Made by a program: the position numbers and the translations under genes. From NCBI RefSeq assembly GCF_006345805.1, contig NC_043005.1, positions 71,052,001-71,116,000 on the forward strand: a DNA stretch of 64,000 bases, given 5' to 3'. Source of the stretch: Octopus sinensis (taxonomy: Eukaryota). Below are positions 4,066-60,539 of this stretch, piece by piece (positions within the stretch are counted from its first letter, which is position 1; each line of letters begins with the position of its first letter). The notes under the pieces are model-generated. The model was given only the letters and a program-made list of their open reading frames with translations. It searched no databases and was not told the DNA's origin.

Positions 4066-6078
4066 GATAGTGGCACATTTTAAGACATTCGTTTAAACCC
4101 TTGGAAAAAATCAGCACACACTCTGATTTTATTATTCTTTTTCTTAGTGTACACGGTTGGTGATACCCATTGACTATATTCCACTTTTTCTAGTTTCTCT
4201 AATTCTAAGTTCACCTGTTTTAATGCTGCGAACGATACAGTTTGTTTTTGTTTAGATACTGTTATGGTATTTTCTTTTATTTGAAAGTGCGCTTTCGTTT
4301 TGGTACACAGACCTAATTTATCAGACATATTTAGGTAAAATATTTAAAATTGTTTTTTTTTTTCAATTCGTAAGATGACTTATTTGTAGTGGATGGAAAA
4401 CTATTCACATTCCTACAGAAAAGATTTATGAGGTCCCATAAGTTAAATAATTCCATCCAGTCAGTTCCAAATAAATTTGTAATATTGTTGAACACAACAA
4501 CTTTGATATTCTAGATTTTTCCACGAAATGTAACATCACTTATTTTTCACGAAATGTATTGTTACTTATCAATTCGCCCTTAAAATATAATTCTTTTCCT
4601 GAAACACCATGAGCAATTTTCGAAGTTTCCTTTTTTCCATGTATCTGTATTAATTATTGAGTTGTCGCTGCCTGTATCCAATGGTAACTTTGCATTTGTG
4701 TTATTAATTTTTACATGCACAAATTTTCTTTAGGGCTCGTTTGTATTTTTTGTCACCAATAATCCGTTTACATGACTTTTTTTCTGTTAAACCATCTTTT
4801 AGGTTTTGTCCTACAGTACGACTTTTTATGGCCCATTTCACCACACATGAAATATTTTATATTTTTAAGCGGACAGTGACTTTCAAAATGTAGACCACCA
4901 CACTCATAACATGGATTCGGTCTTGACGTCTTTTTCTCTTTTGTCTTATTCGATATTGGTTGACAAACTTCAACATGAAAGCAATAATTTTCTTCAGTTT
5001 CTTTTGCATCGTGTCTTAGATTAATAATCCTCTGGCATTCTTCTGCTACTGTTTGCAGAGATAAATTTTGATCCTGTTCTAATTCTGTTAATATCAAGGA
5101 AATTATGACTGCATCTTTGCCGTAAGACCTTGAACAAAAATTAAATACTTGAACATGTCCGGGGTCAGCTCATTCAATTTGAATTTCTCACACTCTTTGT
5201 TAACCACTCCAGTATAGATGACGAAATCTTCATTATGTTTTTGACCAAATTCAAACATTGCCAACGAGTATTGAACAGGGAACTTCTTTCACTGAAAATT
5301 TTCTGACATATTGTTTCATCGAAACAAATCTCTCCTGGCTTCTTCGGTAGAATATAGTTACTATATTTTTCGTGTTCGGCAGGGGATTACTTTCTTAAAA
5401 GTAGTCGTACTTTTTCTCGTAGCACCAACTTTTACTCTCTTGTTTGAAGATTTTTCGTATCTACAAAAATAGGCAACGAAGGTAATCCCTTCTGGATTAT
5501 AACTGATTCATTTCTTCTGGATTATAGCTGAATTCTTCAACTGAGTTTGCTATGCTGTCTGGTGAGTACAAACCTCATTAATACAAGCAACAGCTGGTTT
5601 TGTTGTTGTTGCTGTTGTAGTTGTTACTGTAACTGCTGTTGTTATTTTTAAGCAACAAGACGGGTGATTAGGTGATGGTCTAGGGATTAGGGGCGGGAGG
5701 CCCCAGACCTTGGGGGGGAAAAACTTTGGTCGTTTTGTTGTAGTCGAGGACTCTTCGTTGACACCCGACACCACTGTGAGGTGGCCCTCGAAGTCACTGG
5801 AAATGGAGATCTCCAGGTCCAAATTCTTGAACGGCTGCTGTTGCAACAGCACCACGGAGACCAAAAGTCACCATGCTAAATGAGTTTTTCTTTGGTCTCG
5901 TTCCAAAAAGAAAAATTATACGTCCAACACAAGCTTCGAACAACTCACCACCACTTTCATATCCTTGCATGTTGGATGTATAATATAGTGAAGGTGGGGG
6001 GAAAGAAAGTATTTACACGACGCACTACTATTAATATTACACAAAACTCAATGCTCTGACACGGCTCACAGTGAATTA
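4066..6078 (-). mobile_element. Degenerate Gypsy/Ty3 LTR retrotransposon fragment (partial LTR, gag, start of RT)
   Basis: Gag-like EEFSYNPEEG and twin knuckles CYECGGLHFESHC / CGEMGHKKSYC, then RT start YSQWVSPTVYTKKKNNKIRVCADF. A possible LTR end (ACATCCAACA) lies near 5970. Confidence 0.75.
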
Positions 6079-6293
6079 ATTTCTTTATTACCCACTAGGG
6101 GCGACACAGTAAACATACAATCACGAATGATGAAACAATTATGAACTTTTGGGGTCAGTTAAAAATCGGAATGAACAATAAAAATCGAATGATTACACAA
6201 AGACAAATTTACAAAATTACAAAATGCAGTGGGGCGGGTCCGCGACCCCATGCTCCCCGCCACGACACTTAGCCTTGTGATTTCTTTTGCGTC

Positions 6294-11188: not shown

Positions 11189-11700
11189 TTTCCAGAATTG
11201 TGTTTTTTTTTTTTTTTTTAAATTGTGTTACAACACGCAGTATTTCCCCTCCTTATAGGAGGGGAATAACAAAATTTTCTGGTTCAAAACTAATTAGTTT
11301 TCAGTATATCGACAAACAATTCTTAAACAAAACGATATTAACAAAATTTAAAACAGTACTTTGACTCACGTACCATTCAAAAGTACAAAGAACGTAAACA
11401 AGCGGCGGTTCACAAAAAAACACGATGTATCCAGGTTTTATTTCTTTATTACCCACAAGGGGCTAACGAAGAGGGGGACAACACATCATGATTTGGGGTC
11501 ATGAAGCACGGATGAAATTTACATATAAATGATCTTTAAAAATATTACATGAAATCGAAGACAAAATCGAGGAAATTCGAATGATACACAAATTTTTACA
11601 GCACAACATAAAAACGACACATGAAGGGGGAACACCAGAATTGCCGACCCCACGAGTCCTGTTTTTCCCACCGAAACTCGGCAGCCAACTTACAGCGTGT

Positions 11701-16642: not shown

Positions 16643-16679
16643 TTTTATTACTACCCACAAGGGGCGAACATAGAGGGGA
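16643..16679 (-). mobile_element. Distal 3' tail of element E, displaced by insertion of D
   Basis: Sense TCCCCTCTATGTTCGCCCCTTGTGGGTAGTAATAAAA. Its first 18 nt duplicate the current end of E at 18468-18485. Confidence 0.85.
16662..16679. repeat. 18-bp target site duplication, left copy (GGGCGAACATAGAGGGGA)
   Basis: Identical to 18468-18485. Confidence 0.9.
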
Positions 16680-18467
16680 TTTTTTTATTACCCACAAAGG
16701 GGCCACGAAGAGGGGGACATTACAAGACGGGACATGGGGTACATAAAGTAAAAATAAAATATGAAGTAAAAGATGAATTATATGTAATGAGATGGAACGG
16801 CTTACGAACCCCCAACTCGCAGTTCCGTTTAAAATACAATTGTACATTTCATATATTCCAGTTCAAAATACAATTTTACAGTTACATATATTCCAGTTCA
16901 AAGTACAATAATTTTACAATTTACATGTTAACATTACATATATTCCTGTTCAAAATACAACTTTACATCATACAATTTTACAATTAACAATTCTAATTCT
17001 TTTATATTGGACGTTCGTCCGTCATATAATCTAATAGGTCCATTTGGTCTATTACATCTGGTAATTTGTCATACCGTACATAATGCGTTATATGAATAGC
17101 ATTAAATATCTTTTTTAATTTTGTGTATGTTTCTTTTTCTATAATGACGCCTTTTACATCGTCACTATACAGTTTTGGGTTCACCTTCACCCTGATCAAC
17201 CCTTTCCTACCTGCCAGTCTCTTTTCCACTTCTGTATTCTTGATATACATCACAACCGCTTTCAGGTTTTTTCCTGTAGGCCTTCTTCCATATTTACACG
17301 ATTCCAGCTGTTCGTTCACTCTTGTCTCCCATTCTTGTTCAAACTCTGTCCTTGGCCGCTCTCTCGCCTTCTCTTTTACTTCCTGTTCTTTGCATGTTCT
17401 CTCTTCTCTCTCTTCTGCTATCTTGCTTTTGATTTTTTTTCTTTTTTAGATCTTTCGGTGGCGATTCCACCCTTGATCTCTTCCTATCTTCTGTTTTTTC
17501 CTCTTCTGCACTTGCTCGTTCTTCTCCCGTATCCTCATTTAACTGCTCCTCCATTCGTGCTTCCTCCGCTTTCGCTTCCTCCACACACGCATCTTTACAC
17601 TCCTCTGTCACAACCTCCGGTGCTTTTGTTTTTTCCCGCGGGCACACATCCTTCATGTGGCCCCTCGATTTACAATTATAGCAGATTGGGGGTCTTCCCT
17701 CTACCACAACTCGGAGCCGTGTCTCGTCAGGGTAGACCAACTCCTCCGGGATGTTGTACAGGTCTCGCACGGTTATGTGTGCCAGAACCTGCACCGTATA
17801 TCCCCACCACTTAACCTCTGCTGACTTCTCCACCTTCAATACCTCCACGTTATCCTTGCAGTTGAACAGCACTGCCGCCAGCAACCTCTCCATATTAAAT
17901 TCGGGTGAGATTCTATTGATTCTCATCCTCACTGCCCTCCTTCCGCAGTAACTTGGTAGCAAAGTCCACTTATCCGATTTCAAAATTCGTGTTGCATTCT
18001 TTTTTGCCTCATTTTCTGTTTCAAAATATACCACCACCGTGGCATATTTCCTCCCTCTTTTAAAAAATGTGGGTTCACCCTCAATTTCCTTCAGACACTT
18101 TTCTACTTCTTCCATTTCCGCTACTTCAATTTTTTTCGACTCCACACACCACGTCCTGTACGTTATCGTACGCCTCTCCGCACTGCTTTCCTCCTCCTCG
18201 GACGGTGTGACTCTCACGCAGTCACCCTCCCTCTTTAAACTGTCGAAATACTTTTGTAAAGTCTTCTGCTCGACCACCACCTCCTCCATCTCCAGCTCAC
18301 CGGCAACCAGGCCTCTGCCTGCCGCTCGCGCGTAAGTCTGCTCTTGCATTTTCAAGAAAAAAATTATTCCACGTCCTCCAACGAACTCGAACTCACAACC
18401 TCCTCACTCGAAATAAACACACCAGAACAACTCCAAATAACTTACTCAAAGACTGGAAGCCTAAGAC
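16680..18467 (-). mobile_element. ORF1-only non-autonomous Tx1-type element D (HAL1-like)
   Basis: 118-nt 5' UTR, ORF1, no ORF2 remnant, ~320-nt 3' UTR ending GTGGGTAATAAAAAAA. Flanked by a perfect 18-bp TSD. Confidence 0.85.
17002..18349 (-). CDS. ORF1 of element D (about 450 aa, one frameshift in an A-run at ~17433-17447)
   Basis: TYARAAG, LLPSYCGRRAVRM and knuckle EGRPPICYNCKSRGHMKDVC. The 105-aa ORF 17002..17319 is in frame with an open reading frame reaching back to the A-run. Confidence 0.75.
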
Positions 18468-18485
18468 GGGCGAACATAGAGGGGA
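18468..18485. repeat. 18-bp target site duplication, right copy
   Basis: Identical to 16662-16679. Confidence 0.9.
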
Positions 18486-18604
18486 CAATACAATCTGATG
18501 TGGGGTCAGACATGCGGATGGTTTTTACAAAAAATCGGATTTAAAAATAACATGAAATTACAAGAATATACACAAAATCGAATGATGGAATAGACCGGAA
18601 GACA

Positions 18605-20947
18605 TTACAGGTGGAGTGGGTGCGGGTTTAGCTCGGACCCCACGAGCCCCGCCTCCCCACTGATACTTTTGGTTGCGCTTGGTATTACATTTGTTGTATC
18701 TTTCACTCGCAACTTTCTTGCTACATCTTTCCATCGTTCTTCATACACTTTCCTAGTCAGGCATATTCTCTCCAGCCCTATCTTCCTTTTCAGGTGAAAG
18801 ATGAAATAATTCATCAAACCAGGGCCAGAGATGAACTTGCCTGACTGTAAACCTTTCACTCTCGTCTTCCATATCACCTCTTTCGCAATTGCTACTACAA
18901 CGAGAAAACGAAACTTACCTTCATTCACGAGGAAATCCGGTGGGTCAATTTTTGTAATCGACTCAGTCGACAGCTGTACTCTTCGTGTACCTGACAACAG
19001 CTGTTCGGCATAAACCCACACCTCAGACACGTCCGGACAATGAACAATAGCGTGCGGGACGGTTTCCCTATCCCGCCCGCATCTTGGACATATCGGACTG
19101 TCTTGGCCACCGTGCCTTGCGAGTTTATCCCGAACAGGTAGAGCTCCTCTGTAGCATTGCCATGCCAGAGACTTCTGGAAGTTGTCCAGTGTCCTCGGCT
19201 TGAACGTACGTCGGAACAGACTGGCCAGCTGATTATCGTCGAGACCTAGGGTTTCCCCCAAGGTATCTTCACATTCCGCCTCTACCAACCCTCTATAGAA
19301 GAATGTGGTGGAACCCCCACCGCAGGCGTTGCCCGAGCGACGGAATAGCAGGAGAGCCCTACGACACTCCGTGTACCAAGTACCGAGTTTCGATCTACGA
19401 TTCAGCCAGGTTTCCCGTCCACCGAAACTAGTGAACTTGGAAAACATCAGTTTTGCTAACGGAGACCACACCCGTTCACCATCCAGGTAGAGCCACAGAT
19501 GTCTTAACCTCAGCGCATGTCTGCGCATCATCAGCCAAGGCATCCCTAGCCCACCCTTTAACGGTTGTTGACAGCAAGTAGAGCGTTTCACAAGTGGTTT
19601 CCTACCCTTCCACAAGAAGTAGAAGAGCTGTCTTTCCAACTTGGTCAACCAAGAATCGGGGCAAGGAACGACGGAAAGGCGGTAGGTGATCACCGATGCG
19701 ATAAACACATTGGCCACCTCCGCCCTCCCTTTCAAGGATAGCCACCGCCAAGACCAGGTCATGGCTACTGCAGCCACCTTGCTCGTTACCTCGCCCCAAT
19801 TCTTCTCTATTTGGAGGTCTGGACCGAACCAGACCCCTAGCAGTTTAATCGGACCCTCCGTCCAACGTCCCACGACGCTGTCAGGAGGCATCGACTTGCC
19901 TCTCCAGGTGCCGAGTTGCAAGCCGACTAACTTTTCGCGATTAACTTTTGCTCCTGTCACCGTCTCGTAAGCCTCTATGGCCTTGCCTACTTTACATAGG
20001 TGGTCCATTTCGGTTACGATGATGGTGATGTCATCCGCGTACGCTGACACTGATTTTCCATTACCTGGCTGTCTCGGGATGCCGCTCAGTTTTCGCAGTA
20101 ATGGCTCAAGAGCCATCACGTACAAAAGCGAGGAGAGCGGACACCCTTGACGAACCGAGCGTTTGATTTTGAACGGCTTCGACAAGAAGCCGTTCACCCG
20201 AACTACCGAGTCGATGTTATCATAAATTTGGATAATCCACCTGAGGAAGCCAAGGCTCAGCCCGAACTGTGCCAGGGCAGATACCAGGTAACGATGGTCG
20301 ACCCTATCAAAAGCTTTCGATTGGTCTAAATGGACCAGTGCCCCACCCTTGCCAGAATCACTATTAAACCCCTCTATAGTGTACCGCATTAGATGGAGAT
20401 TATCCTGAATGGATCTGCCCGGAACGGCACATGTCTGTGCCTCCCCGATCAGACCATCCGCGACACGCGCCAATCTTTTCGATAACACTTTGGCCAAAAT
20501 CTTCAACTCTGTGTTTAGCAGAGTGATGGGCCTGAAATTATCAATACACTCCCCCTTGCTCGGGTCCTTTCTGACGAGGGTCACCACTCCCCGGCGCACA
20601 GATCTGGGTATAAGCCCGTTCTGCTGCCAGTTCGCATAGACCTCCGCCAGTAGGTGCCCGAACAAGTCTGGCATACTCTTATATAACTCATAGGGTAGAC
20701 CATCCAAACCCGGCGCCTTGCCCGCGCCGCAGTCTGCCATTGCCTCAACCACCTCCTCAGGCGTGATTGGCCCTTCACAGCCCTCCGCATCTCGCCCCGA
20801 TAAGCGCGGCAGCCCGTCGAGTAGGTCCGTAAAGGCCCTCCTCCTATCCAGTCCGCCGCACTCACCGAAAAGCTGAGCGAAGTGCTCCTGAAAGGCCTCA
20901 CACATCTCCTCGGGTTCGTTTATCAACTCACCTTGTTGGTTCGTCAA
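18605..20947 (-). CDS. Tx1 ORF2, RT and C-terminal zinc knuckle, element E (5'-partial, 780 aa open)
   Basis: KAPGLDG, FRPITLLN, LDQSKAFDRV, QGCPLS, AYADD and CPRCGRDRETVPHAIVHC, with no stops. Confidence 0.9.
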   Translation of the reverse strand: MTNQQGELINEPEEMCEAFQEHFAQLFGECGGLDRRRAFTDLLDGLPRLSGRDAEGCEGPITPEEVVEAMADCGAGKAPGLDGLPYELYKSMPDLFGHLLAEVYANWQQNGLIPRSVRRGVVTLVRKDPSKGECIDNFRPITLLNTELKILAKVLSKRLARVADGLIGEAQTCAVPGRSIQDNLHLMRYTIEGFNSDSGKGGALVHLDQSKAFDRVDHRYLVSALAQFGLSLGFLRWIIQIYDNIDSVVRVNGFLSKPFKIKRSVRQGCPLSSLLYVMALEPLLRKLSGIPRQPGNGKSVSAYADDITIIVTEMDHLCKVGKAIEAYETVTGAKVNREKLVGLQLGTWRGKSMPPDSVVGRWTEGPIKLLGVWFGPDLQIEKNWGEVTSKVAAVAMTWSWRWLSLKGRAEVANVFIASVITYRLSVVPCPDSWLTKLERQLFYFLWKGRKPLVKRSTCCQQPLKGGLGMPWLMMRRHALRLRHLWLYLDGERVWSPLAKLMFSKFTSFGGRETWLNRRSKLGTWYTECRRALLLFRRSGNACGGGSTTFFYRGLVEAECEDTLGETLGLDDNQLASLFRRTFKPRTLDNFQKSLAWQCYRGALPVRDKLARHGGQDSPICPRCGRDRETVPHAIVHCPDVSEVWVYAEQLLSGTRRVQLSTESITKIDPPDFLVNEGKFRFLVVVAIAKEVIWKTRVKGLQSGKFISGPGLMNYFIFHLKRKIGLERICLTRKVYEERWKDVARKLRVKDTTNVIPSATKSISGEAGLVGSELNPHPLHL

Positions 20948-20977
20948 AGATCGAATCGTGGCACCGTTACCATGCTG

Positions 20978-21077
20978 NNNNNNNNNNNNNNNNNNNNNNN
21001 NNNNNNNNNNNNNNNNNNNNNNNNNNNNNNNNNNNNNNNNNNNNNNNNNNNNNNNNNNNNNNNNNNNNNNNNNNNNN
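20978..21077. other. Assembly gap (100 N)
   Basis: Run of n. Confidence 1.
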
Positions 21078-34865: not shown

Positions 34866-35272
34866 TATTTACTACCCACAAGGACCTAAACACAGAGAGA
34901 GCAAAGAAGGACAGACAAACGTATTAAGTCGATTACGTCGACTCCAGTGTGTAACTGGTACTTATTTAATCGTCCCCGAAAGGATGAAAGGCAAAGTCGA
35001 CCTCGGCGGAATTTGAACTCAGAACGTAGCGGCAGGTGAAATACCTATTACTTTACTACCCACAAGGGGCTAAACACAGAGAGGACAAACAAGGACAGTC
35101 AAACGGATTAAGTCGATTACATCGACCCCAGTGCGTAACTGGTACTTATTTAATCGAATCCGAAAGGATGAAAGGCAAAGTTGACCTCGGTGGAATTTGA
35201 ACTCAGAACGTAATGGCAGACGAAATACACAGTTCGCCCGGCGTGCTAACGTTTCTGCTAGCTCGCCACCTT
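34866..35272 (-). mobile_element. Dimer of the tRNA-derived SINE carrying the Tx1-type tail
   Basis: Head, body and tail followed by a headless body and tail. The whole dimer is flanked by a 15-bp TSD CTCAGTTG(A/G)CATACC (34851-34865 / 35273-35287). Confidence 0.85.
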
Positions 35273-36142
35273 CTCAGTTGGCATACCAATGCACCCTTTT
35301 ACCTACAAAGTCATGCATGCTTTTATACTCTGCTAATGCATTCACTCAAAAGATGGCTAATACTTTCGTTTCCTTTCCTGCAGATTCCACATTCGATTTC
35401 TGATTTAGTCAGTCATTGCTTTTAACAGATTCATCATAATGGCTTGTTTCTGAGTGGTTACAATTAGCACTTCAGTCTCTGGTTTCTAGCTCCCGTTGTC
35501 AGCTATAACCAGCATTTATTACTTTCAACATCCTTGGTTTCTTGCACGAATTGATCATGTAATTCCATCTCTTTCCACCTACTTGTTCTACTGTCCTTCC
35601 TTCTGTTCTTGAATTCTCCTACTGTTTCAGTATTATTTTGGACATATCTAACCACCGACATTATCAATATTTTCACTGAGTACAACATAATTTTTAAACC
35701 CCGGTATCACAGCACTAACGGTGTCTTCTATATTTTAGTAATCCCCAGCCTCCTTCTTTCCATGGTTGTTATAGTCTGTCGGTAATATTTAAGGGTGATG
35801 TGCATTGTCAGCAGCTTTTGGGTTCTGTCTATGTTCTGTAGCTCGATCTCTGTCCGTTCAGTAAGAAAGCATGGTAACTTAATACTGGCATAATCCATGT
35901 ATTTATCGCATTATTGATGTTCAATCCATTTAACTTTGTTTCGAGCACTTTTCTGATTCTTCTATTGAACACTTGGGAGATTTTCTCTCTAATTTCTCTT
36001 TCTGTTATCCTTTCGTCTTGCCATATCTATAGGTATATATAGCCCAACATTATTCCTCAATGATTGTCGTCGTCACCGCCACCACCACCACCACTACCAT
36101 CATCATCATCATCATCATCATCATTATCATCATCATTATCAT

Positions 36143-46094: not shown

Positions 46095-46760
46095 TTAGAT
46101 TTGCCTGGACCGGCGAGCTGGCAGAAACGATAGCATGCCGGGCAAGATGATTTGCGGCATTTCGTCCGTCTTTATGTTCTGGGTTCAAATTCAACCAGGG
46201 TCGATTTTTGGTTTTTGTACTTTCGCCGTCGGTAAAATAAATACCAATTGAGCACTGGGGGCAATTTAATCGACTTATCTCCTCCTTCGAAATTGTTAGC
46301 CTTCTGCCAAAATTTGAAACCAATATCTTTAGCTTTACATAGGGCAGCAAGCAATAAAGAAATAAGAAACGTTAGCAAATCGGGCGAAGTGCTTAGCCGT
46401 ATTTCGTCTGCCGCTACGTTGTGAGTTCAAATTCCACCGAGGTCGACTTTGCCTTTCATCCTTTCGGGGTCGATTAAATAAGTACAAGTTACGCACTGGG
46501 GTCGATATAATCGACTTAATCCGTTTGGCTGTCCTTGTATGACCTCTCTGTATGTAGCCCCTTGTGGGTAGTAAAGAAATAGGCATTTCATCCGTCTATA
46601 TCTTCTGAGTTCAAATTCCATCGAGCTCGGCTTCGCATTTCATCCTTTCGGGGTCAATTAAATAAGTACCAGTTGAACACTAGGGGGGTCGATGCAATCG
46701 TCTTATCCCCTCCCCCGACACTGCTGGCCTAGTGCCAAAATATGAAACCAATATCGCTAG
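46095..46760 (+). mobile_element. Nested SINE cluster including a Tx1-tailed unit (46366-46581)
   Basis: Tail TAGCCCCTTGTGGGTAGTAAAGAAATA is joined to GGCATTTC of a tail-less SINE body. Confidence 0.8.
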
Positions 46761-53176: not shown

Positions 53177-53216
53177 ATCTGTTTTTTTATTACCCATGCG
53201 GGCCAACGTAGAGGGA
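53177..53216 (-). mobile_element. 40-bp insertion consisting of only the shared Tx1/SINE tail
   Basis: Sense TCCCTCTACGTTGGCCCGCATGGGTAATAAAAAAAC, flanked by direct repeats AACGCCTTGG (53167-53176 / 53217-53226). Confidence 0.7.
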
Positions 53217-53689
53217 AACGCCTTGGGTCAAACAAGACAAACTGTGGTGTCATGTAAAAGCTCACAACTTCTTTCACTTGAAGAGAATGCCACCCAACTT
53301 AATACAACTTAGCTTGGCTCTTTAGTACACATTTAACAGGGGTTTCACTCTGTGGCAATTATTCGGACAAGTCTCTTAGTTGAAGATGATTTAGTCGCAA
53401 GATACGCCGCTTTCCTTTATGAAGCACTACTAAATACAAATAGCAAATGGAAGTATTTTGTTAAAACACTTTCAGGCTGAACGAAGTACAGCAGCCTGAG
53501 AGTGTTTAAAACCAGTGTTTCCTAACTTAATTTTCCCCGGTCCAGCTATAGCTTTCCGGGAAAATGGATGCGCCACAGGTGTTTGGAAATAAAACATCTT
53601 TAAAAATATTTCATCATTAAATACTTTCCTTAAAGAAATATCCACTCTAGGGCATTAGAATAGTGCTACATTATTTTCTACTCTAGGTA

Positions 53690-54104
53690 CAAGGTCCGAA
53701 ATTTTGAGGGAGCGGAGCCAGTCGATTAAATCGACTCCAGTACGCAACTGGTACTGAATTTATCGACTCCGAAAGGTTGAAAGGCAAAATCGACCCCGGC
53801 GGAATTTAAACTCAGAATATAAAGAAAAACGAAATACCGCTGAGTATTTCACCCGGCGTGCTAACGTTTCTTATTTATTTATTGCCCAAAAGGGGCTAAA
53901 CATAGAGGGGACAAACAAGGACAGACAAACGGATTAAGTCGATTACATCGACCCCAGTGCGTAACTGGTAATTATTTAATCGACTCCGAAAGGATGAAAG
54001 GCAAAGTCGACCTCGGCGGAATTTGAACTCAGAACGTAGCGGCTGTCAAAACACCGCTAAGTATTCCGCCCGGCGTGCTAACGATTCTGCCAGCTCGCCG
54101 CCTT
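53690..54104 (-). mobile_element. Tx1-tailed SINE (53871-54104) joined into the head of a tail-less SINE (53690-53870)
   Basis: Tail GTCCCCTCTATGTTTAGCCCCTTTTGGGCAATAAATAAATAA is followed by GAAACGTTAGCACGCCGGG. Confidence 0.8.
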
Positions 54105-54391
54105 AATAACAACAACAATAATGATAATAATGATAATAATTATTATAATAATTATAATAATGATAATGATCCTTTCTAATTTTGTGCACTAGGCCAGCAA
54201 TTTTGATGCTAGTGGAAAGTCATTATATCGACGCGGTGCTTATTTTATCGATCTCAATAATATGCAACGCAAAGTCGACTAATACTATAAAATATATAAT
54301 ACGAGCATAACCGCGTTACAGAAAGACAGTTTACAGAATTTACAGGATTCTGCACTCATGAAAATCTTAGTGCATCGCCACTAATTTTAAG

Positions 54392-59625: not shown

Positions 59626-59810
59626 CGTATTGTATACCGTCATGAGGTTTTGCATATCTTCTCCTGAATAGTTGTCCAGTCTCCCTCGTAAAGGCAGCTC
59701 TACCCTTTCGCGATAACTTTAAAGCACCCCGTCGAATATATCCGTGGAGTGACGGATTAAAACTGACTAAATGGTGATGCAATACTATAAATACTGAGTA
59801 AAAGTATGTT

Positions 59811-60036
59811 TGTTTCTTTATTACCCACAGAAGGGCTAAACACACAGAGGACAAACAAGGACAGACAAACGGATTAAGTCGATTACATAGACCCTAGTGC
59901 GTAACTGGTACTTAATTTATCGACCCCGAAAGGATGAAAGGCAAAATCGACCTCGGCGGAATTTGAACTCAGAACGTAACGGCAGACGAAATACGGCTAC
60001 GCATTTCGCCCGGCGTTTCTGCCAGCTCGCCGCCTT
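59811..60036 (-). mobile_element. Full-length Tx1-tailed SINE
   Basis: Head AAGGCGGCGAGCTGGCAG and tail TTTAGCCCTTCTGTGGGTAATAAAGAAAC. Confidence 0.85.
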
Positions 60037-60539
60037 ACACCGTCGTATATATCAGTGGAGTGATGGATCAAAAATGATTAAATTGTGATGCAATCCTATA
60101 AACACTGAGTGAAAGTATGTCGAGTACGAAAGTATTTATGTTGGCAAAAACGCTGACTAAATAACTTATACTTTTTCTACTTGAAGAAAGGCTGAAAAGA
60201 ACATTTCTTTCAAATTGCATTGTGCTATTGTCTTATTTGTTCTAATTCCGTATCGCCAAGAGATTTTACATTTTATTAAAAGTTGGTATTTGTGACTTTA
60301 TGGGGATAACATTTACGACAAGCAAACTTCTCCGCCATTTACTTAAAGTATCCTATGAGAGATTTTTCACAAATAAAACCAGATACTAATATCAGATAAA
60401 AATGTACGTTTATCAATCGACGAAATTAGCACAAATCACTCAGCATCCAATTTAAAAGAAATATTGTTTTCTGTCATTTTCAGCAGCAACAATATCAATT
60501 ATTTATTTACTCAGTACATTTGCCAACAGACATCATGGC

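What the first reader, a model, noticed from the sequence alone, without database searches (positions are those of the whole stretch)
16662..18485. ORF1-only (half-LINE) Tx1 element that retrotransposed into the conserved tail of an autonomous Tx1, with a perfect 18-bp TSD
Seen in sequence: D (16680-18467) has its own 5' UTR, a gag-like ORF1 with CCHC knuckle, no endonuclease or RT remnant, its own 3' UTR, the shared tail and an oligo(A). It is flanked by GGGCGAACATAGAGGGGA on both sides, and removing D restores the tail of E. So D moved as a unit by target-primed reverse transcription (TPRT) using another element's ORF2, and the cut site lies inside the tail shared by the Tx1 families and the SINE. 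Established analogues are mammalian HAL1 and Drosophila HeT-A. Inference: a three-tier system of autonomous Tx1, ORF1-only parasite and tailed SINE, in which one ~40-nt motif acts both as mobilisation signal and as target. Insertion there could also disable the host element's 3' end.
Basis: partly seen in the sequence, partly recalled or inferred. Interest (0 to 1): 0.88.

Follow-up and report, generated by a model that had tools for sequence, protein, structure and literature searches.

The report
ORF1-only retrotransposon nested in octopus LINE
A 1.8-kb octopus retrotransposon that encodes only the RNA-binding ORF1 protein, and no enzymes of its own, has copied itself into the 3' tail of a full-size LINE; relatives in three octopus genomes show it belongs to an old ORF1-only lineage, a known kind of genomic parasite not found described for this LINE group in the papers searched.

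Summary
GGGCGAACATAGAGGGGA occurs exactly at 16662-16679 and 18468-18485, with none expected by chance. The 1788 bp between them (D, minus strand) interrupt the 3' tail of an autonomous Tx1-like LINE (E). Intact E-family copies from Octopus vulgaris and O. sinensis run straight through this site, and 18 bp of the reference match both flanks.

D has a 118-nt 5'UTR, a 336-codon ORF1 (predicted tandem RRM folds plus a CCHC knuckle), a frameshifted C-terminal domain, an AT-rich 3'UTR, the shared tail and A7. It has no endonuclease or reverse-transcriptase similarity.

D is not a one-off deletion. Gap-free elements with the same layout occur in O. bimaculoides, O. vulgaris and O. sinensis. D's ORF1 falls in a well-supported clade that holds no sampled autonomous element. 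Between subfamilies, synonymous sites are saturated while amino acids are conserved. It is a HAL1/HeT-A/Ag-Sponge-type element from a Tx1-like background.

The "tail is also the target" idea is only partly supported. 13 of 19 complete tails are followed at once by another tail-bearing element, but at the tail's A-rich end. Only E is split internally, and two other ORF1-only copies sit in unrelated DNA. The copy number of D's own subfamily is untested.

The parts
18468..18485 (-). Upstream copy (in element orientation) of the 18-bp target-site duplication; part of E's tail.
   Evidence: Exact repeat, 0 expected by chance. Matches E-family unit positions 5237-5254.
18350..18467 (-). D 5'UTR (118 nt). 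Its start GTCTTAGGCTTCCAGTCTTTGAGT resembles the 5' end of the O. vulgaris ORF1-only copy L004.
   Evidence: Read directly. No blastn similarity to the 5'UTRs of A, B or C.
17339..18349 (-). D ORF1, 336 codons plus stop. Two RRM-like folds at about residues 60-220; CCHC zinc knuckle at residues 224-239 (17633-17680).
   Evidence: 27-37% identical to ORF1 of A, B and C. zf-CCHC E 0.0012, below Pfam's cut-off. 399 relatives, every one with a source name is from Octopus. AlphaFold2 pLDDT about 90 in the core; Foldseek finds tandem-RRM proteins at E 2e-4.
17002..17445 (-). C-terminal domain of the ORF1 protein (147 codons open), out of frame with ORF1 in this copy. The shift most likely lies in the A-run 17433-17447.
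   Evidence: P0005 and P0003 carry the same domain fused in frame. The profile hits D and L001 c1, c2, c3 at E 1e-31 to 6e-46.
16728..17001 (-). D 3'UTR. AT-rich spacer with a 35-bp x2.5 repeat (16823-16909), then a conserved 3' block homologous to the 3' ends of autonomous and other ORF1-only elements.
16680..16727 (-). D tail: CCCCCTCT box, small hairpin GCCC-CTTTGT-GGGT and AATAAA, ending in A7 (16680-16686).
   Evidence: nhmmer E 1.5e-9. 87.5% over 40 nt to B's tail and 82% over 68 nt to the tail of L009 e0. Hairpin folds.
16662..16679 (-). Downstream copy of the 18-bp target-site duplication.
16643..16661 (-). Remainder of E's tail downstream of the insertion (CTTGTGGGTAGTAATAAAA). The 5' end of element B follows directly.
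18486..20977 (-). Host element E: autonomous Tx1-like LINE with ORF2 open for 780 codons, a 3'UTR and the first part of its tail. It is cut at the 100-N gap 20978-21077.
   Evidence: RVT_1 and zf-RVT. 95-98% amino-acid identity to E-family copies in O. vulgaris and O. sinensis..
11441..11485 (-). Tail of autonomous element B, the autonomous tail most like D's in the window, so B's family is a candidate source of the ORF2 protein.

Best explanation
D is a non-autonomous, ORF1-only retrotransposon derived from Tx1-like LINEs of the Octopus vulgaris/sinensis group.

It keeps a 5'UTR, a gene for an RNA-binding ORF1 protein (two RRM-like folds, a CCHC knuckle and a lineage-typical C-terminal domain), and the last ~170 nt of a LINE. 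That 3' end includes a conserved ~45-nt tail with a small hairpin. The whole of ORF2 (endonuclease and reverse transcriptase) is missing.

Proposed mechanism:
- D's transcript is copied into DNA by the ORF2 protein of a co-resident autonomous Tx1-like element that recognises the shared tail.
- The endonuclease nicked the bottom strand of E's tail at 5'-GAGGGGA|CAATAC-3', and reverse transcription began at D's A7 end.
- The top strand was cut 18 nt downstream, which gave the 18-bp duplication.

What is shown and what is inferred:
- Shown: the insertion, its exact borders, the lack of ORF2, the shared tail, the existence of the same layout in three species, and conservation of ORF1.
- Inferred: trans-mobilisation through the tail, and which autonomous family supplies ORF2 protein (B-like families have the closest tail).

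The ORF1-only condition is old and has probably arisen more than once, as with mammalian HAL1. D landing in a tail fits a general tendency of these elements to insert next to each other's 3' ends. The specific internal site is most simply a single event.
For: - Exact 18-bp duplication and restored E tail.
- ORF1 homology to autonomous ORF1s, the RRM-like model and the CCHC knuckle.
- No EN or RT similarity.
- The 3' ~170 nt and the tail are shared with autonomous elements and SINEs.
- The tail hairpin is kept by compensatory changes: CCC/GGG, GGC/GCC and GCC/GGC.
- Gap-free ORF1-only relatives: L001 c1/c2 in O. bimaculoides; L004 with an 11-bp duplication and L008 in O. vulgaris; L009 e0 in O. 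sinensis.
- ORF1 tree: D groups with L001 c1, P0001 and P0005 at 95-99% bootstrap, with none of nine autonomous ORF1s inside.
- Between ORF1-only subfamilies pS is 0.73-0.89 against pN 0.33-0.39.
- Kojima 2018 (PMC5786205) lists HeT-A, HAL1 and Ag-Sponge as ORF1-present non-autonomous LINEs.
Against: - Only one copy of D's own subfamily was seen. No protein more than 54% identical exists among 5.8 billion clusters, so this subfamily may be low-copy.
- D's ORF1 protein is split by a frameshift (which may be a homopolymer error), so this copy may be inactive.
- D's 5'UTR has no detectable similarity to the autonomous 5'UTRs in the window.
- The tree is neighbour-joining on 146 columns with a small sample, so unsampled autonomous members of D's clade are possible.
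- L009 e0 groups with autonomous ORF1s, so ORF1-only elements are not one lineage.
- The 'Tx1' clade label rests on domain content and on published repeat annotation of octopus, not on an RT phylogeny done here.
Confidence: 0.8

Rival explanations
1. The shared tail is itself a sequence-specific landing site. The Tx1 endonuclease or RNP recognises tail DNA, so autonomous, ORF1-only and SINE members insert into or next to each other's tails. This would be a self-targeting community that builds head-to-tail arrays. It is the reader's 'signal and target' idea.
For: - 13 of 19 complete tails in the window and nine loci are followed at once by another tail-class element in the same orientation.
- Arrays mix different families (window E->B->C; L009 e0->e1->e2->e3).
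- 4 of 7 ORF1-only copies with a known upstream flank lie in or right after a tail.
- Many Tx1-clade LINEs are target-specific, and tandem insertions are known for them (Kojima 2015, PMC4494074).
Against: - The junctions are at the A-rich end (AATAAAGAAA), not at D's internal site, and no other tail is split.
- L004 (11-bp duplication TGCTGGGTTCG) and L008 lie in unrelated DNA. L005 lies in (ATT)n.
- The nick sites of D and L004 share no motif.
- A preference for A/T-rich 3' ends, as with Alu A-tails for L1, or template jumping would give the same arrays.
- The loci were chosen through ORF1 proteins, so the sample is small and not random.
Confidence: 0.3
2. D's position inside E's tail is a chance or regional event. 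D inserted at a non-consensus site in a TE-dense nest. The arrays arise separately, from endonuclease preference for A-rich ends or from reverse-transcriptase template jumps.
For: - It is the only internal tail insertion among 20 tails.
- Tails make up under 1% of the window, so one hit in a finding picked out by eye is not strong statistics.
- Junctions in L003 differ in their A-runs, and one L009 junction has a 30-nt stuttered spacer, which suits either mechanism.
Against: The overall association of ORF1-only 5' ends with tails (4 of 7) is far above the roughly 1% expected. D's case could be the same preference acting 23-30 nt upstream.
Confidence: 0.5
3. D is a one-off, dead-on-arrival copy of an autonomous element that lost ORF2 by an internal deletion or by splicing of its RNA. 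It would not be a member of a propagating ORF1-only family.
For: - A single D copy in the window and no close protein relative in the databases.
- L009 e0 shows that ORF2 loss recurs.
Against: - The same ORF1 -> C-terminal domain -> short 3'UTR -> tail layout, with a homologous 3'UTR junction, occurs in O. bimaculoides copies only 46-54% identical in ORF1.
- D's clade holds no autonomous ORF1.
- ORF1 is conserved across saturated synonymous divergence.
Confidence: 0.06
4. The ORF1-like gene is a domesticated host gene, and D is its processed retrocopy; or the structure is an assembly artefact.
For: Several relatives are annotated as ordinary 'uncharacterized' octopus proteins. A 100-N gap lies 2.5 kb away.
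Against: - D ends in the LINE tail, not a poly(A) tail after a host 3'UTR.
- Relatives are multi-copy, carry their own duplications and sit in LINE arrays.
- The flanks join into a perfect E tail, which a misassembly would not produce.
Confidence: 0.03

Closest known systems
HAL1 (half-L1) of mammals
   Same: A non-autonomous LINE derivative that encodes only an ORF1 protein, keeps LINE ends, is spread by the partner's ORF2 protein, and arose independently several times (Kojima 2018, PMC5753468). Here too ORF2 loss looks recurrent.
   Different: HAL1 derives from the L1 clade, whose ORF1 protein is of the coiled-coil/RRM/CTD type and which uses poly(A) tails. D has an RRM-RRM-CCHC ORF1, no hit to the L1 ORF1 Pfam family, a specific structured tail rather than a long poly(A), and is found in cephalopods.
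HeT-A of Drosophila (Jockey clade)
   Same: A gag/ORF1-only element that depends on the reverse transcriptase of other elements and is found in head-to-tail arrays with autonomous relatives (PMC5786205; the array structure is from my own knowledge).
   Different: HeT-A adds to chromosome ends without a target-site duplication. D has an 18-bp duplication and lies inside another element. A telomeric location was not testable here.
Ag-Sponge of Anopheles (CR1 clade)
   Same: Listed with HAL1 and HeT-A as an ORF1-present bipartite non-autonomous LINE (PMC5786205).
   Different: It belongs to a different LINE clade and host.
Target-specific Tx1-clade LINEs and their SINEs (Tx1-Mar/SINEU, Keno, Kibi, Koshi)
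   Same: In the Tx1 clade, partners share target preference, and tandem insertions sandwich a duplication (Kojima 2015, PMC4494074). Octopus genomes carry recently active L1-Tx1 families (PMC13282606).
   Different: Those targets are other transposons, snRNA genes or microsatellites. Here the recurrent neighbour is the elements' own 3' end. No ORF1-only member is described in these papers.
Stringent-type LINE/SINE pairs with a shared 3' stem-loop (for example eel UnaL2/UnaSINE1; own knowledge, cited in PMC4494074 as Kajikawa and Okada 2002)
   Same: A short conserved 3' tail with a hairpin is shared by LINE and SINE. Here an ORF1-only element shares it too, and the stem shows compensatory changes.
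   Different: Recognition of the octopus tail by a reverse transcriptase has not been tested.

Membership tests
ORF1-only non-autonomous LINE (HAL1 / HeT-A / Ag-Sponge kind) | Encodes a homologue of the LINE ORF1 protein | tested here: met
   27-37% identity to ORF1 of four autonomous elements; 399 relatives; tandem RRM-like model plus CCHC.
ORF1-only non-autonomous LINE (HAL1 / HeT-A / Ag-Sponge kind) | Lacks endonuclease and reverse transcriptase | tested here: met
   tblastn with ORF2 of A, B, C and E finds only noise in D. There are 274 nt (16728-17001) between the ORF1-CTD stop codon and the tail.
ORF1-only non-autonomous LINE (HAL1 / HeT-A / Ag-Sponge kind) | 3' end shared with autonomous partner LINEs | tested here: met
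   Tail 87.5% identical to B's; 3' ~170 nt align with E, B, C and L003; the tail profile hits all of them.
ORF1-only non-autonomous LINE (HAL1 / HeT-A / Ag-Sponge kind) | 5' end shared with an autonomous partner | tested here: inconclusive
   No blastn match between D's 5'UTR and A, B or C. By eye it resembles only the 5' end of another ORF1-only copy, L004.
ORF1-only non-autonomous LINE (HAL1 / HeT-A / Ag-Sponge kind) | Moved as a unit by target-primed reverse transcription (target-site duplication, restorable empty site) | tested here: met
   18-bp exact duplication; empty site shown with paralogous E copies; L004 has an 11-bp duplication.
ORF1-only non-autonomous LINE (HAL1 / HeT-A / Ag-Sponge kind) | A propagating multi-copy lineage rather than a single deletion | tested here: inconclusive
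   Met at lineage level: L001 c1, c2, c3, L002 e1, L004, L008 and L009 e0 in three species, with a separate ORF1 clade. D's own subfamily could not be counted because no octopus genome can be searched by DNA here.
ORF1-only non-autonomous LINE (HAL1 / HeT-A / Ag-Sponge kind) | ORF1 kept by selection | tested here: met
   Between subfamilies pS is 0.73-0.89 and pN 0.33-0.39; D vs L001 c3 gives dN/dS about 0.19. Two adjacent copies differ neutrally, as expected after insertion.
HAL1 proper (L1 clade) | ORF1 of the L1 type (Transposase_22 / coiled-coil-RRM-CTD) and a poly(A) 3' end | tested here: not met
   Pfam gives only zf-CCHC. The tail is a specific sequence ending in A7.
Tx1 clade of LINEs (for the partner elements and D's origin) | APE-type endonuclease, RT and C-terminal zinc-binding domain in ORF2; RRM+CCHC ORF1 | tested here: met
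   Exo_endo_phos, RVT_1 and zf-RVT; ORF1 model.
Tx1 clade of LINEs (for the partner elements and D's origin) | RT groups with reference Tx1 elements in a phylogeny | not tested
No reference Tx1 sequences were at hand.
Tx1 clade of LINEs (for the partner elements and D's origin) | Sequence-specific target | tested here: inconclusive
   13 of 19 tails are followed by another element, but L004, L008 and L005 lie elsewhere.
Stringent LINE/SINE tail partnership | Conserved 3' stem-loop shared by LINE and non-autonomous elements | tested here: met
   Alignments and folds. Three compensatory stem versions.
Stringent LINE/SINE tail partnership | The reverse transcriptase needs the tail for initiation | not testable with these tools
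   Needs a retrotransposition or in vitro TPRT assay.
HeT-A-type telomeric element | Addition to chromosome ends, without a target-site duplication | tested here: not met
   D has an 18-bp duplication and lies inside E. The chromosomal position of the window is unknown.

The most novel reading that the evidence does not exclude
The ~45-nt structured tail serves the whole community both as the reverse-transcription start signal and as the preferred landing pad. The community comprises several autonomous Tx1-like families, at least two or three ORF1-only lineages, and a tRNA-headed SINE. New copies are therefore steered into or next to older copies and build mixed head-to-tail arrays, a self-targeting 'safe haven'. 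The ORF1-only lineages would persist for tens of millions of years because their protein, with its own C-terminal domain, contributes to the shared particle.
Probability: 0.25. Interest if true: 0.72.

Novelty: new member of a known kind. Interest (0 to 1): 0.52.

Why it matters
ORF1-only LINE derivatives are the rare parasites of parasites that still make a protein. The review read here lists them from only three LINE clades: L1, Jockey and CR1.

A fourth, Tx1-like case in octopuses, with several old and diverged lineages and a conserved extra domain, gives an independent system for two questions. The first is why a non-autonomous element keeps ORF1. The second is how a structured 3' tail is shared among three tiers of elements.

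It also matters for repeat annotation of cephalopod genomes. LINEs and SINEs each make up about 12% of the O. vulgaris genome, and such elements are currently annotated as uncharacterized host genes. The head-to-tail arrays give a direct handle on target choice in this group.

Tried and rejected
- Exact-protein look-ups of D ORF1, P0001 and P0005 found no contigs.
- The word-indexed protein search gave only one hit. The exhaustive search was needed to find more.
- Rfam found nothing in the window.
- Pfam found nothing for the C-terminal domain. Its profile gave no significant hit in autonomous ORF1s; a short motif in L005's ORF1 reached only E 0.05.
- Long database hits (P0004, P0027, P0040, P0136 and others) were checked for ORF1-RT fusions and none was found. 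Some are chimeric gene models with WD40 or astacin domains.
- dN/dS between the two adjacent O. bimaculoides copies was uninformative: 13 and 12 differences, ratios 0.8 and 3.1.
- A formal pair count on the hairpin was dropped because MAFFT put the 5' arms of the variants one column out of register. The stems are listed from the single-sequence folds instead.
- One literature search was wasted on 'half-line', which is a mathematics term. Bao and Jurka 2010 is not held.
- One fuzzy-regex script timed out.
- The idea that the bottom-strand primer annealed to D's own CCCCCTCT box was considered and rejected. That would have produced a copy lacking its own tail and duplication.
Full report
**1. 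What is in the sequence**

All features lie on the minus strand.

- GGGCGAACATAGAGGGGA is exact at 16662-16679 and 18468-18485. The only other matches in 64 kb have 3 mismatches, and none was expected in 100 shuffles.
- The neighbouring bases differ on both sides, so the repeat is exactly 18 bp.
- The 1788 bp between the copies (D, 16680-18467) read 5'->3' as follows:
  - a 118-nt leader;
  - an ATG at 18349 opening a 336-codon frame that ends at 17339;
  - a second frame, open for 147 codons (17445->17002);
  - an AT-rich stretch with a 35-bp x2.5 repeat;
  - a conserved 3' block;
  - the tail ...TGTCCCCCTCTTCGTGGCCCCTTTGTGGGTAATAAAAAAA.
- D occurs once in the window at the DNA level.

**2. 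The insertion is real**

- Upstream of D lies the ORF2 and 3'UTR of an autonomous LINE, called E. It has RVT_1 and zf-RVT domains and an ORF2 open for 780 codons.
- An independent E-family unit from O. vulgaris (L003) aligns to window 20973->18468 at 94.6% and then continues at 16679->16643. Its positions 5237-5254 match twice, which is the 18-bp duplication.
- An O. sinensis E-family copy (L009; ORF2 98% identical in protein) has the uninterrupted tail TTGTATTGTCCCCTCTATGTTCGCCCCTTGTGGGTAGTAATAAAA. This is identical to the two window flanks joined.
- So D plus one repeat copy is an insertion into E's tail, with the hallmarks of target-primed reverse transcription.
- From the geometry, the first nick was at 5'-GAGGGGA|CAATAC-3' on the bottom strand, and the second was 18 nt downstream, inside the tail hairpin. 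This is inference.

**3. What D encodes**

- D's ORF1 is 27-37% identical to the ORF1 regions of the four autonomous elements in the window.
- Pfam sees only a weak CCHC knuckle.
- An AlphaFold2 model built on 23 relatives is confident in the core (pLDDT about 90 for residues 60-220). Foldseek matches it to tandem-RRM proteins such as IMP3 RRM12 and hnRNP A1 UP1 (E 2e-4, probability 1.0).
- The protein is therefore an RRM-RRM-CCHC protein, as expected for an RNA-binding LINE ORF1 protein.
- The second frame is not junk. O. bimaculoides proteins P0005 and P0003 carry the same ~100-residue segment fused in frame to ORF1.
- A profile of that segment hits D and three O. bimaculoides copies at E 1e-31 to 6e-46.
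- In D the two frames are separated by a shift, most likely in the A-run 17433-17447. This could be a true mutation or a homopolymer error.
- No ORF2 similarity exists in D.

**4. Source organism and relatives**

- The word-indexed protein search gave one hit, from O. bimaculoides, at 54% identity.
- The exhaustive search gave 399 relatives. Every one that carries a source name is from Octopus bimaculoides, O. sinensis or O. vulgaris; the rest are unnamed Logan contigs.
- E is 95-98% identical in protein to copies in O. vulgaris and O. sinensis, so the window comes from that species group.
- Published repeat annotation reports 13 recently active L1-Tx1 families in O. vulgaris (PMC13282606).

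**5. D is not a one-off deletion**

Nine loci were fetched around related proteins. Elements with the same ORF1-only layout are:

- L001 c1 and c2 (O. bimaculoides): ORF1, the C-terminal domain, a ~170-nt 3'UTR homologous to D's, and a tail variant.
- L001 c3 joined to L002 e1 by an overlap.
- L004 (O. vulgaris): about 1735 bp, an intact 379-codon ORF1, 'tgtaaa' repeats like D's, a tail, and an 11-bp duplication TGCTGGGTTCG.
- L008 (O. vulgaris).
- L009 e0 (O. sinensis).

No ORF2 was found in L001, L002 or L004. In L008 the only RT similarity is a weak hit on the opposite strand, 5.5 kb away.

The last ~170 nt of all these elements also align with the 3' ends of the autonomous elements. The layout is therefore what an internal loss of ORF2 would leave.

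In neighbour-joining trees of the 146-residue ORF1 core:

- D groups with L001 c1, P0001 and P0005 at 95-99% bootstrap.
- L004, L008 and P0003 form a second clade at 100%.
- None of the nine autonomous ORF1s falls in either clade.
- L009 e0 sits among the autonomous ORF1s, so ORF2 loss probably happened more than once. This is also reported for HAL1 (PMC5753468).

Between ORF1-only subfamilies synonymous sites are saturated (pS 0.73-0.89) while pN is 0.33-0.39. ORF1 has thus been kept by selection over a long divergence. Two adjacent copies differ neutrally, as expected after insertion.

**6. The tail**

- A profile of the tail finds it on D, E, B and C, on five copies of a tRNA-headed ~260-bp SINE, on a short fragment at 53182-53217, and on the elements in the other loci.
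- It contains a pyrimidine box (TCCCCTCT), a 3-4-bp hairpin and AATAAAG.
- The hairpin stem occurs as CCC/GGG, GGC/GCC and GCC/GGC. These are compensatory changes, which argue for a structure that is read as RNA.
- Autonomous elements, ORF1-only elements and SINEs sharing such a tail is the classic signature of a stringent LINE partnership.
- That the ORF2 protein of a B-like family mobilises D is inferred from tail similarity: 87.5% to B and 82% to L009 e0, which sits next to a B-family element.

**7. Is the tail also the target?**

- Leaving D aside, 13 of 19 complete tails are followed immediately by the 5' end of another tail-class element in the same orientation. Examples are window E->B, B->C and three SINE junctions, L001, L002, L003 (two), L007 and L009 (three).
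- Arrays mix families of different decay states. In the window, B and C are broken while E's ORF2 is open. The three 99%-identical L003 units have different A-runs at their junctions. Simple DNA duplication therefore does not explain the arrays.
- A real preference for landing at tails is thus likely.
- However, the junction is at the A-rich end of the tail. Only E is split internally.
- L004 and L008 lie in unrelated DNA, and an autonomous O. sinensis copy lies in (ATT)n. The nick sites of D and L004 share no motif.
- Endonuclease preference for A/T-rich ends (as with Alu A-tails and L1; own knowledge), serial targeting with sandwiched duplications (described for Tx1-clade SINEU, PMC4494074) and template jumping all remain possible.
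I rate it at about 0.3.

**8. Comparison with known systems and verdict**

- Kojima (PMC5786205) lists the ORF1-present non-autonomous LINEs as HeT-A (Jockey clade), HAL1 (L1) and Ag-Sponge (CR1). No Tx1-derived case is listed.
- My searches found no description of one in octopus. Repbase could not be checked.
- D meets the defining features of this kind of element, apart from a demonstrable shared 5' end and a copy count for its own subfamily.
- It is not HAL1 proper. The ORF1 type and the 3' end are different.
- It is best called a new member of a known kind. Its extra points of interest are the age and plurality of the ORF1-only lineages, their conserved C-terminal domain, and the array-forming habit.

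Noticed in passing
window 1-20977 (minus strand); also L003, L009, L001, L002: The first 21 kb of the window is one head-to-tail array of four autonomous Tx1-like LINEs of different families (E, B, C, A). Each 5'UTR starts within a few bases of the previous tail. Similar arrays occur in O. sinensis (L009: ORF1-only e0 -> B-family -> E-family -> e3, mixed families), O. vulgaris (L003: three E-family units 99% alike, with different junction A-runs) and O. bimaculoides.
   Followed up: partly
window 46300-46640 (+); 53875-54130, 35048-35330, 34868-35047, 59813-60080 (-): A tRNA-headed SINE of about 260 bp carries the same tail as the LINEs. Two loci (35057->34873 and 46558->next) share one dimer junction, so a dimer seems to have been amplified as a unit.
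   Followed up: partly
tails in window (16687-16727, 11441-11485, 6080-6108) and in L001, L002, L004, L005: The small hairpin just before AATAAAG exists in three stem versions (CCC/GGG, GGC/GCC, GCC/GGC). These compensatory changes indicate a conserved RNA structure.
   Followed up: partly
L001 6799-6801 and 8307-8309; proteins P0001, P0006: All O. bimaculoides copies of the closest family have an in-frame TAA ('GKVDF*') directly before the C-terminal domain, which stays open behind it. D instead has a frameshift. This may mean readthrough or recoding, or a domain in the course of being lost.
   Followed up: no
window 17002-17445 (-); L001 6802-7065, 8310-8573, 9979-10509: The ~100-residue C-terminal domain of the ORF1 protein has no Pfam match. 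It was significant only in ORF1-only elements of D's clade, not in the autonomous ORF1s sampled. One weak motif was seen in L005's ORF1.
   Followed up: partly
L009 1-1183: An ORF1-only element (e0) has an ORF1 that groups with autonomous ORF1s and a different C-terminal extension, while its tail is 82% like D's. This suggests repeated, independent loss of ORF2.
   Followed up: partly
window about 4100-5950 (-): A fragment of an LTR-retrotransposon gag (two CCHC knuckles) and protease (LDTGSD) lies between C's tail and element A, probably inserted into A's 5'UTR. C's tail is followed by a 5'UTR-like start, ATTCACTGTGAGCC.
   Followed up: no
window 53182-53240 (-): A tail-only fragment of about 34 nt (CTCTACGTTGGCCCGCATGGGTAATAAAAAAA) is flanked by the imperfect repeat GAyCCAAGGCGTT(T)CC. 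It looks like an extremely 5'-truncated insertion.
   Followed up: no
L005 7700-7780 and 13343-13380: An autonomous O. sinensis Tx1-like element (ORF1 of 600 codons, then ORF2) sits in an (ATT)n microsatellite on both sides.
   Followed up: no
L008 6700-8790: An O. vulgaris ORF1-only copy lacks the last ~60 nt of the tail and is bracketed by imperfect direct repeats of about 70 bp. This is unlike an ordinary target-site duplication.
   Followed up: no
L006 (Logan SRR11869394 contig, 5956 nt) 4987-5745: A D-like ORF1 fragment lies downstream of an intron-less MMS22L reading frame on a single contig that looks like a transcript (intron-less ORF), so such elements may be carried in host mRNAs.
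   Followed up: no
window 20978-21077: A 100-N assembly gap cuts element E at about position 2739 of the family unit. No E-family 5' sequence follows the gap, so E is either 5'-truncated or part of it is missing from the assembly.
   Followed up: partly
window 59760-60200 (-): The SINE at 59817 is flanked by an imperfect repeat of about 40 bp (catacttt(c/t)actcagt...gcatcac). This is too long and too diverged for a normal duplication; it may be part of a larger local repeat.
   Followed up: no
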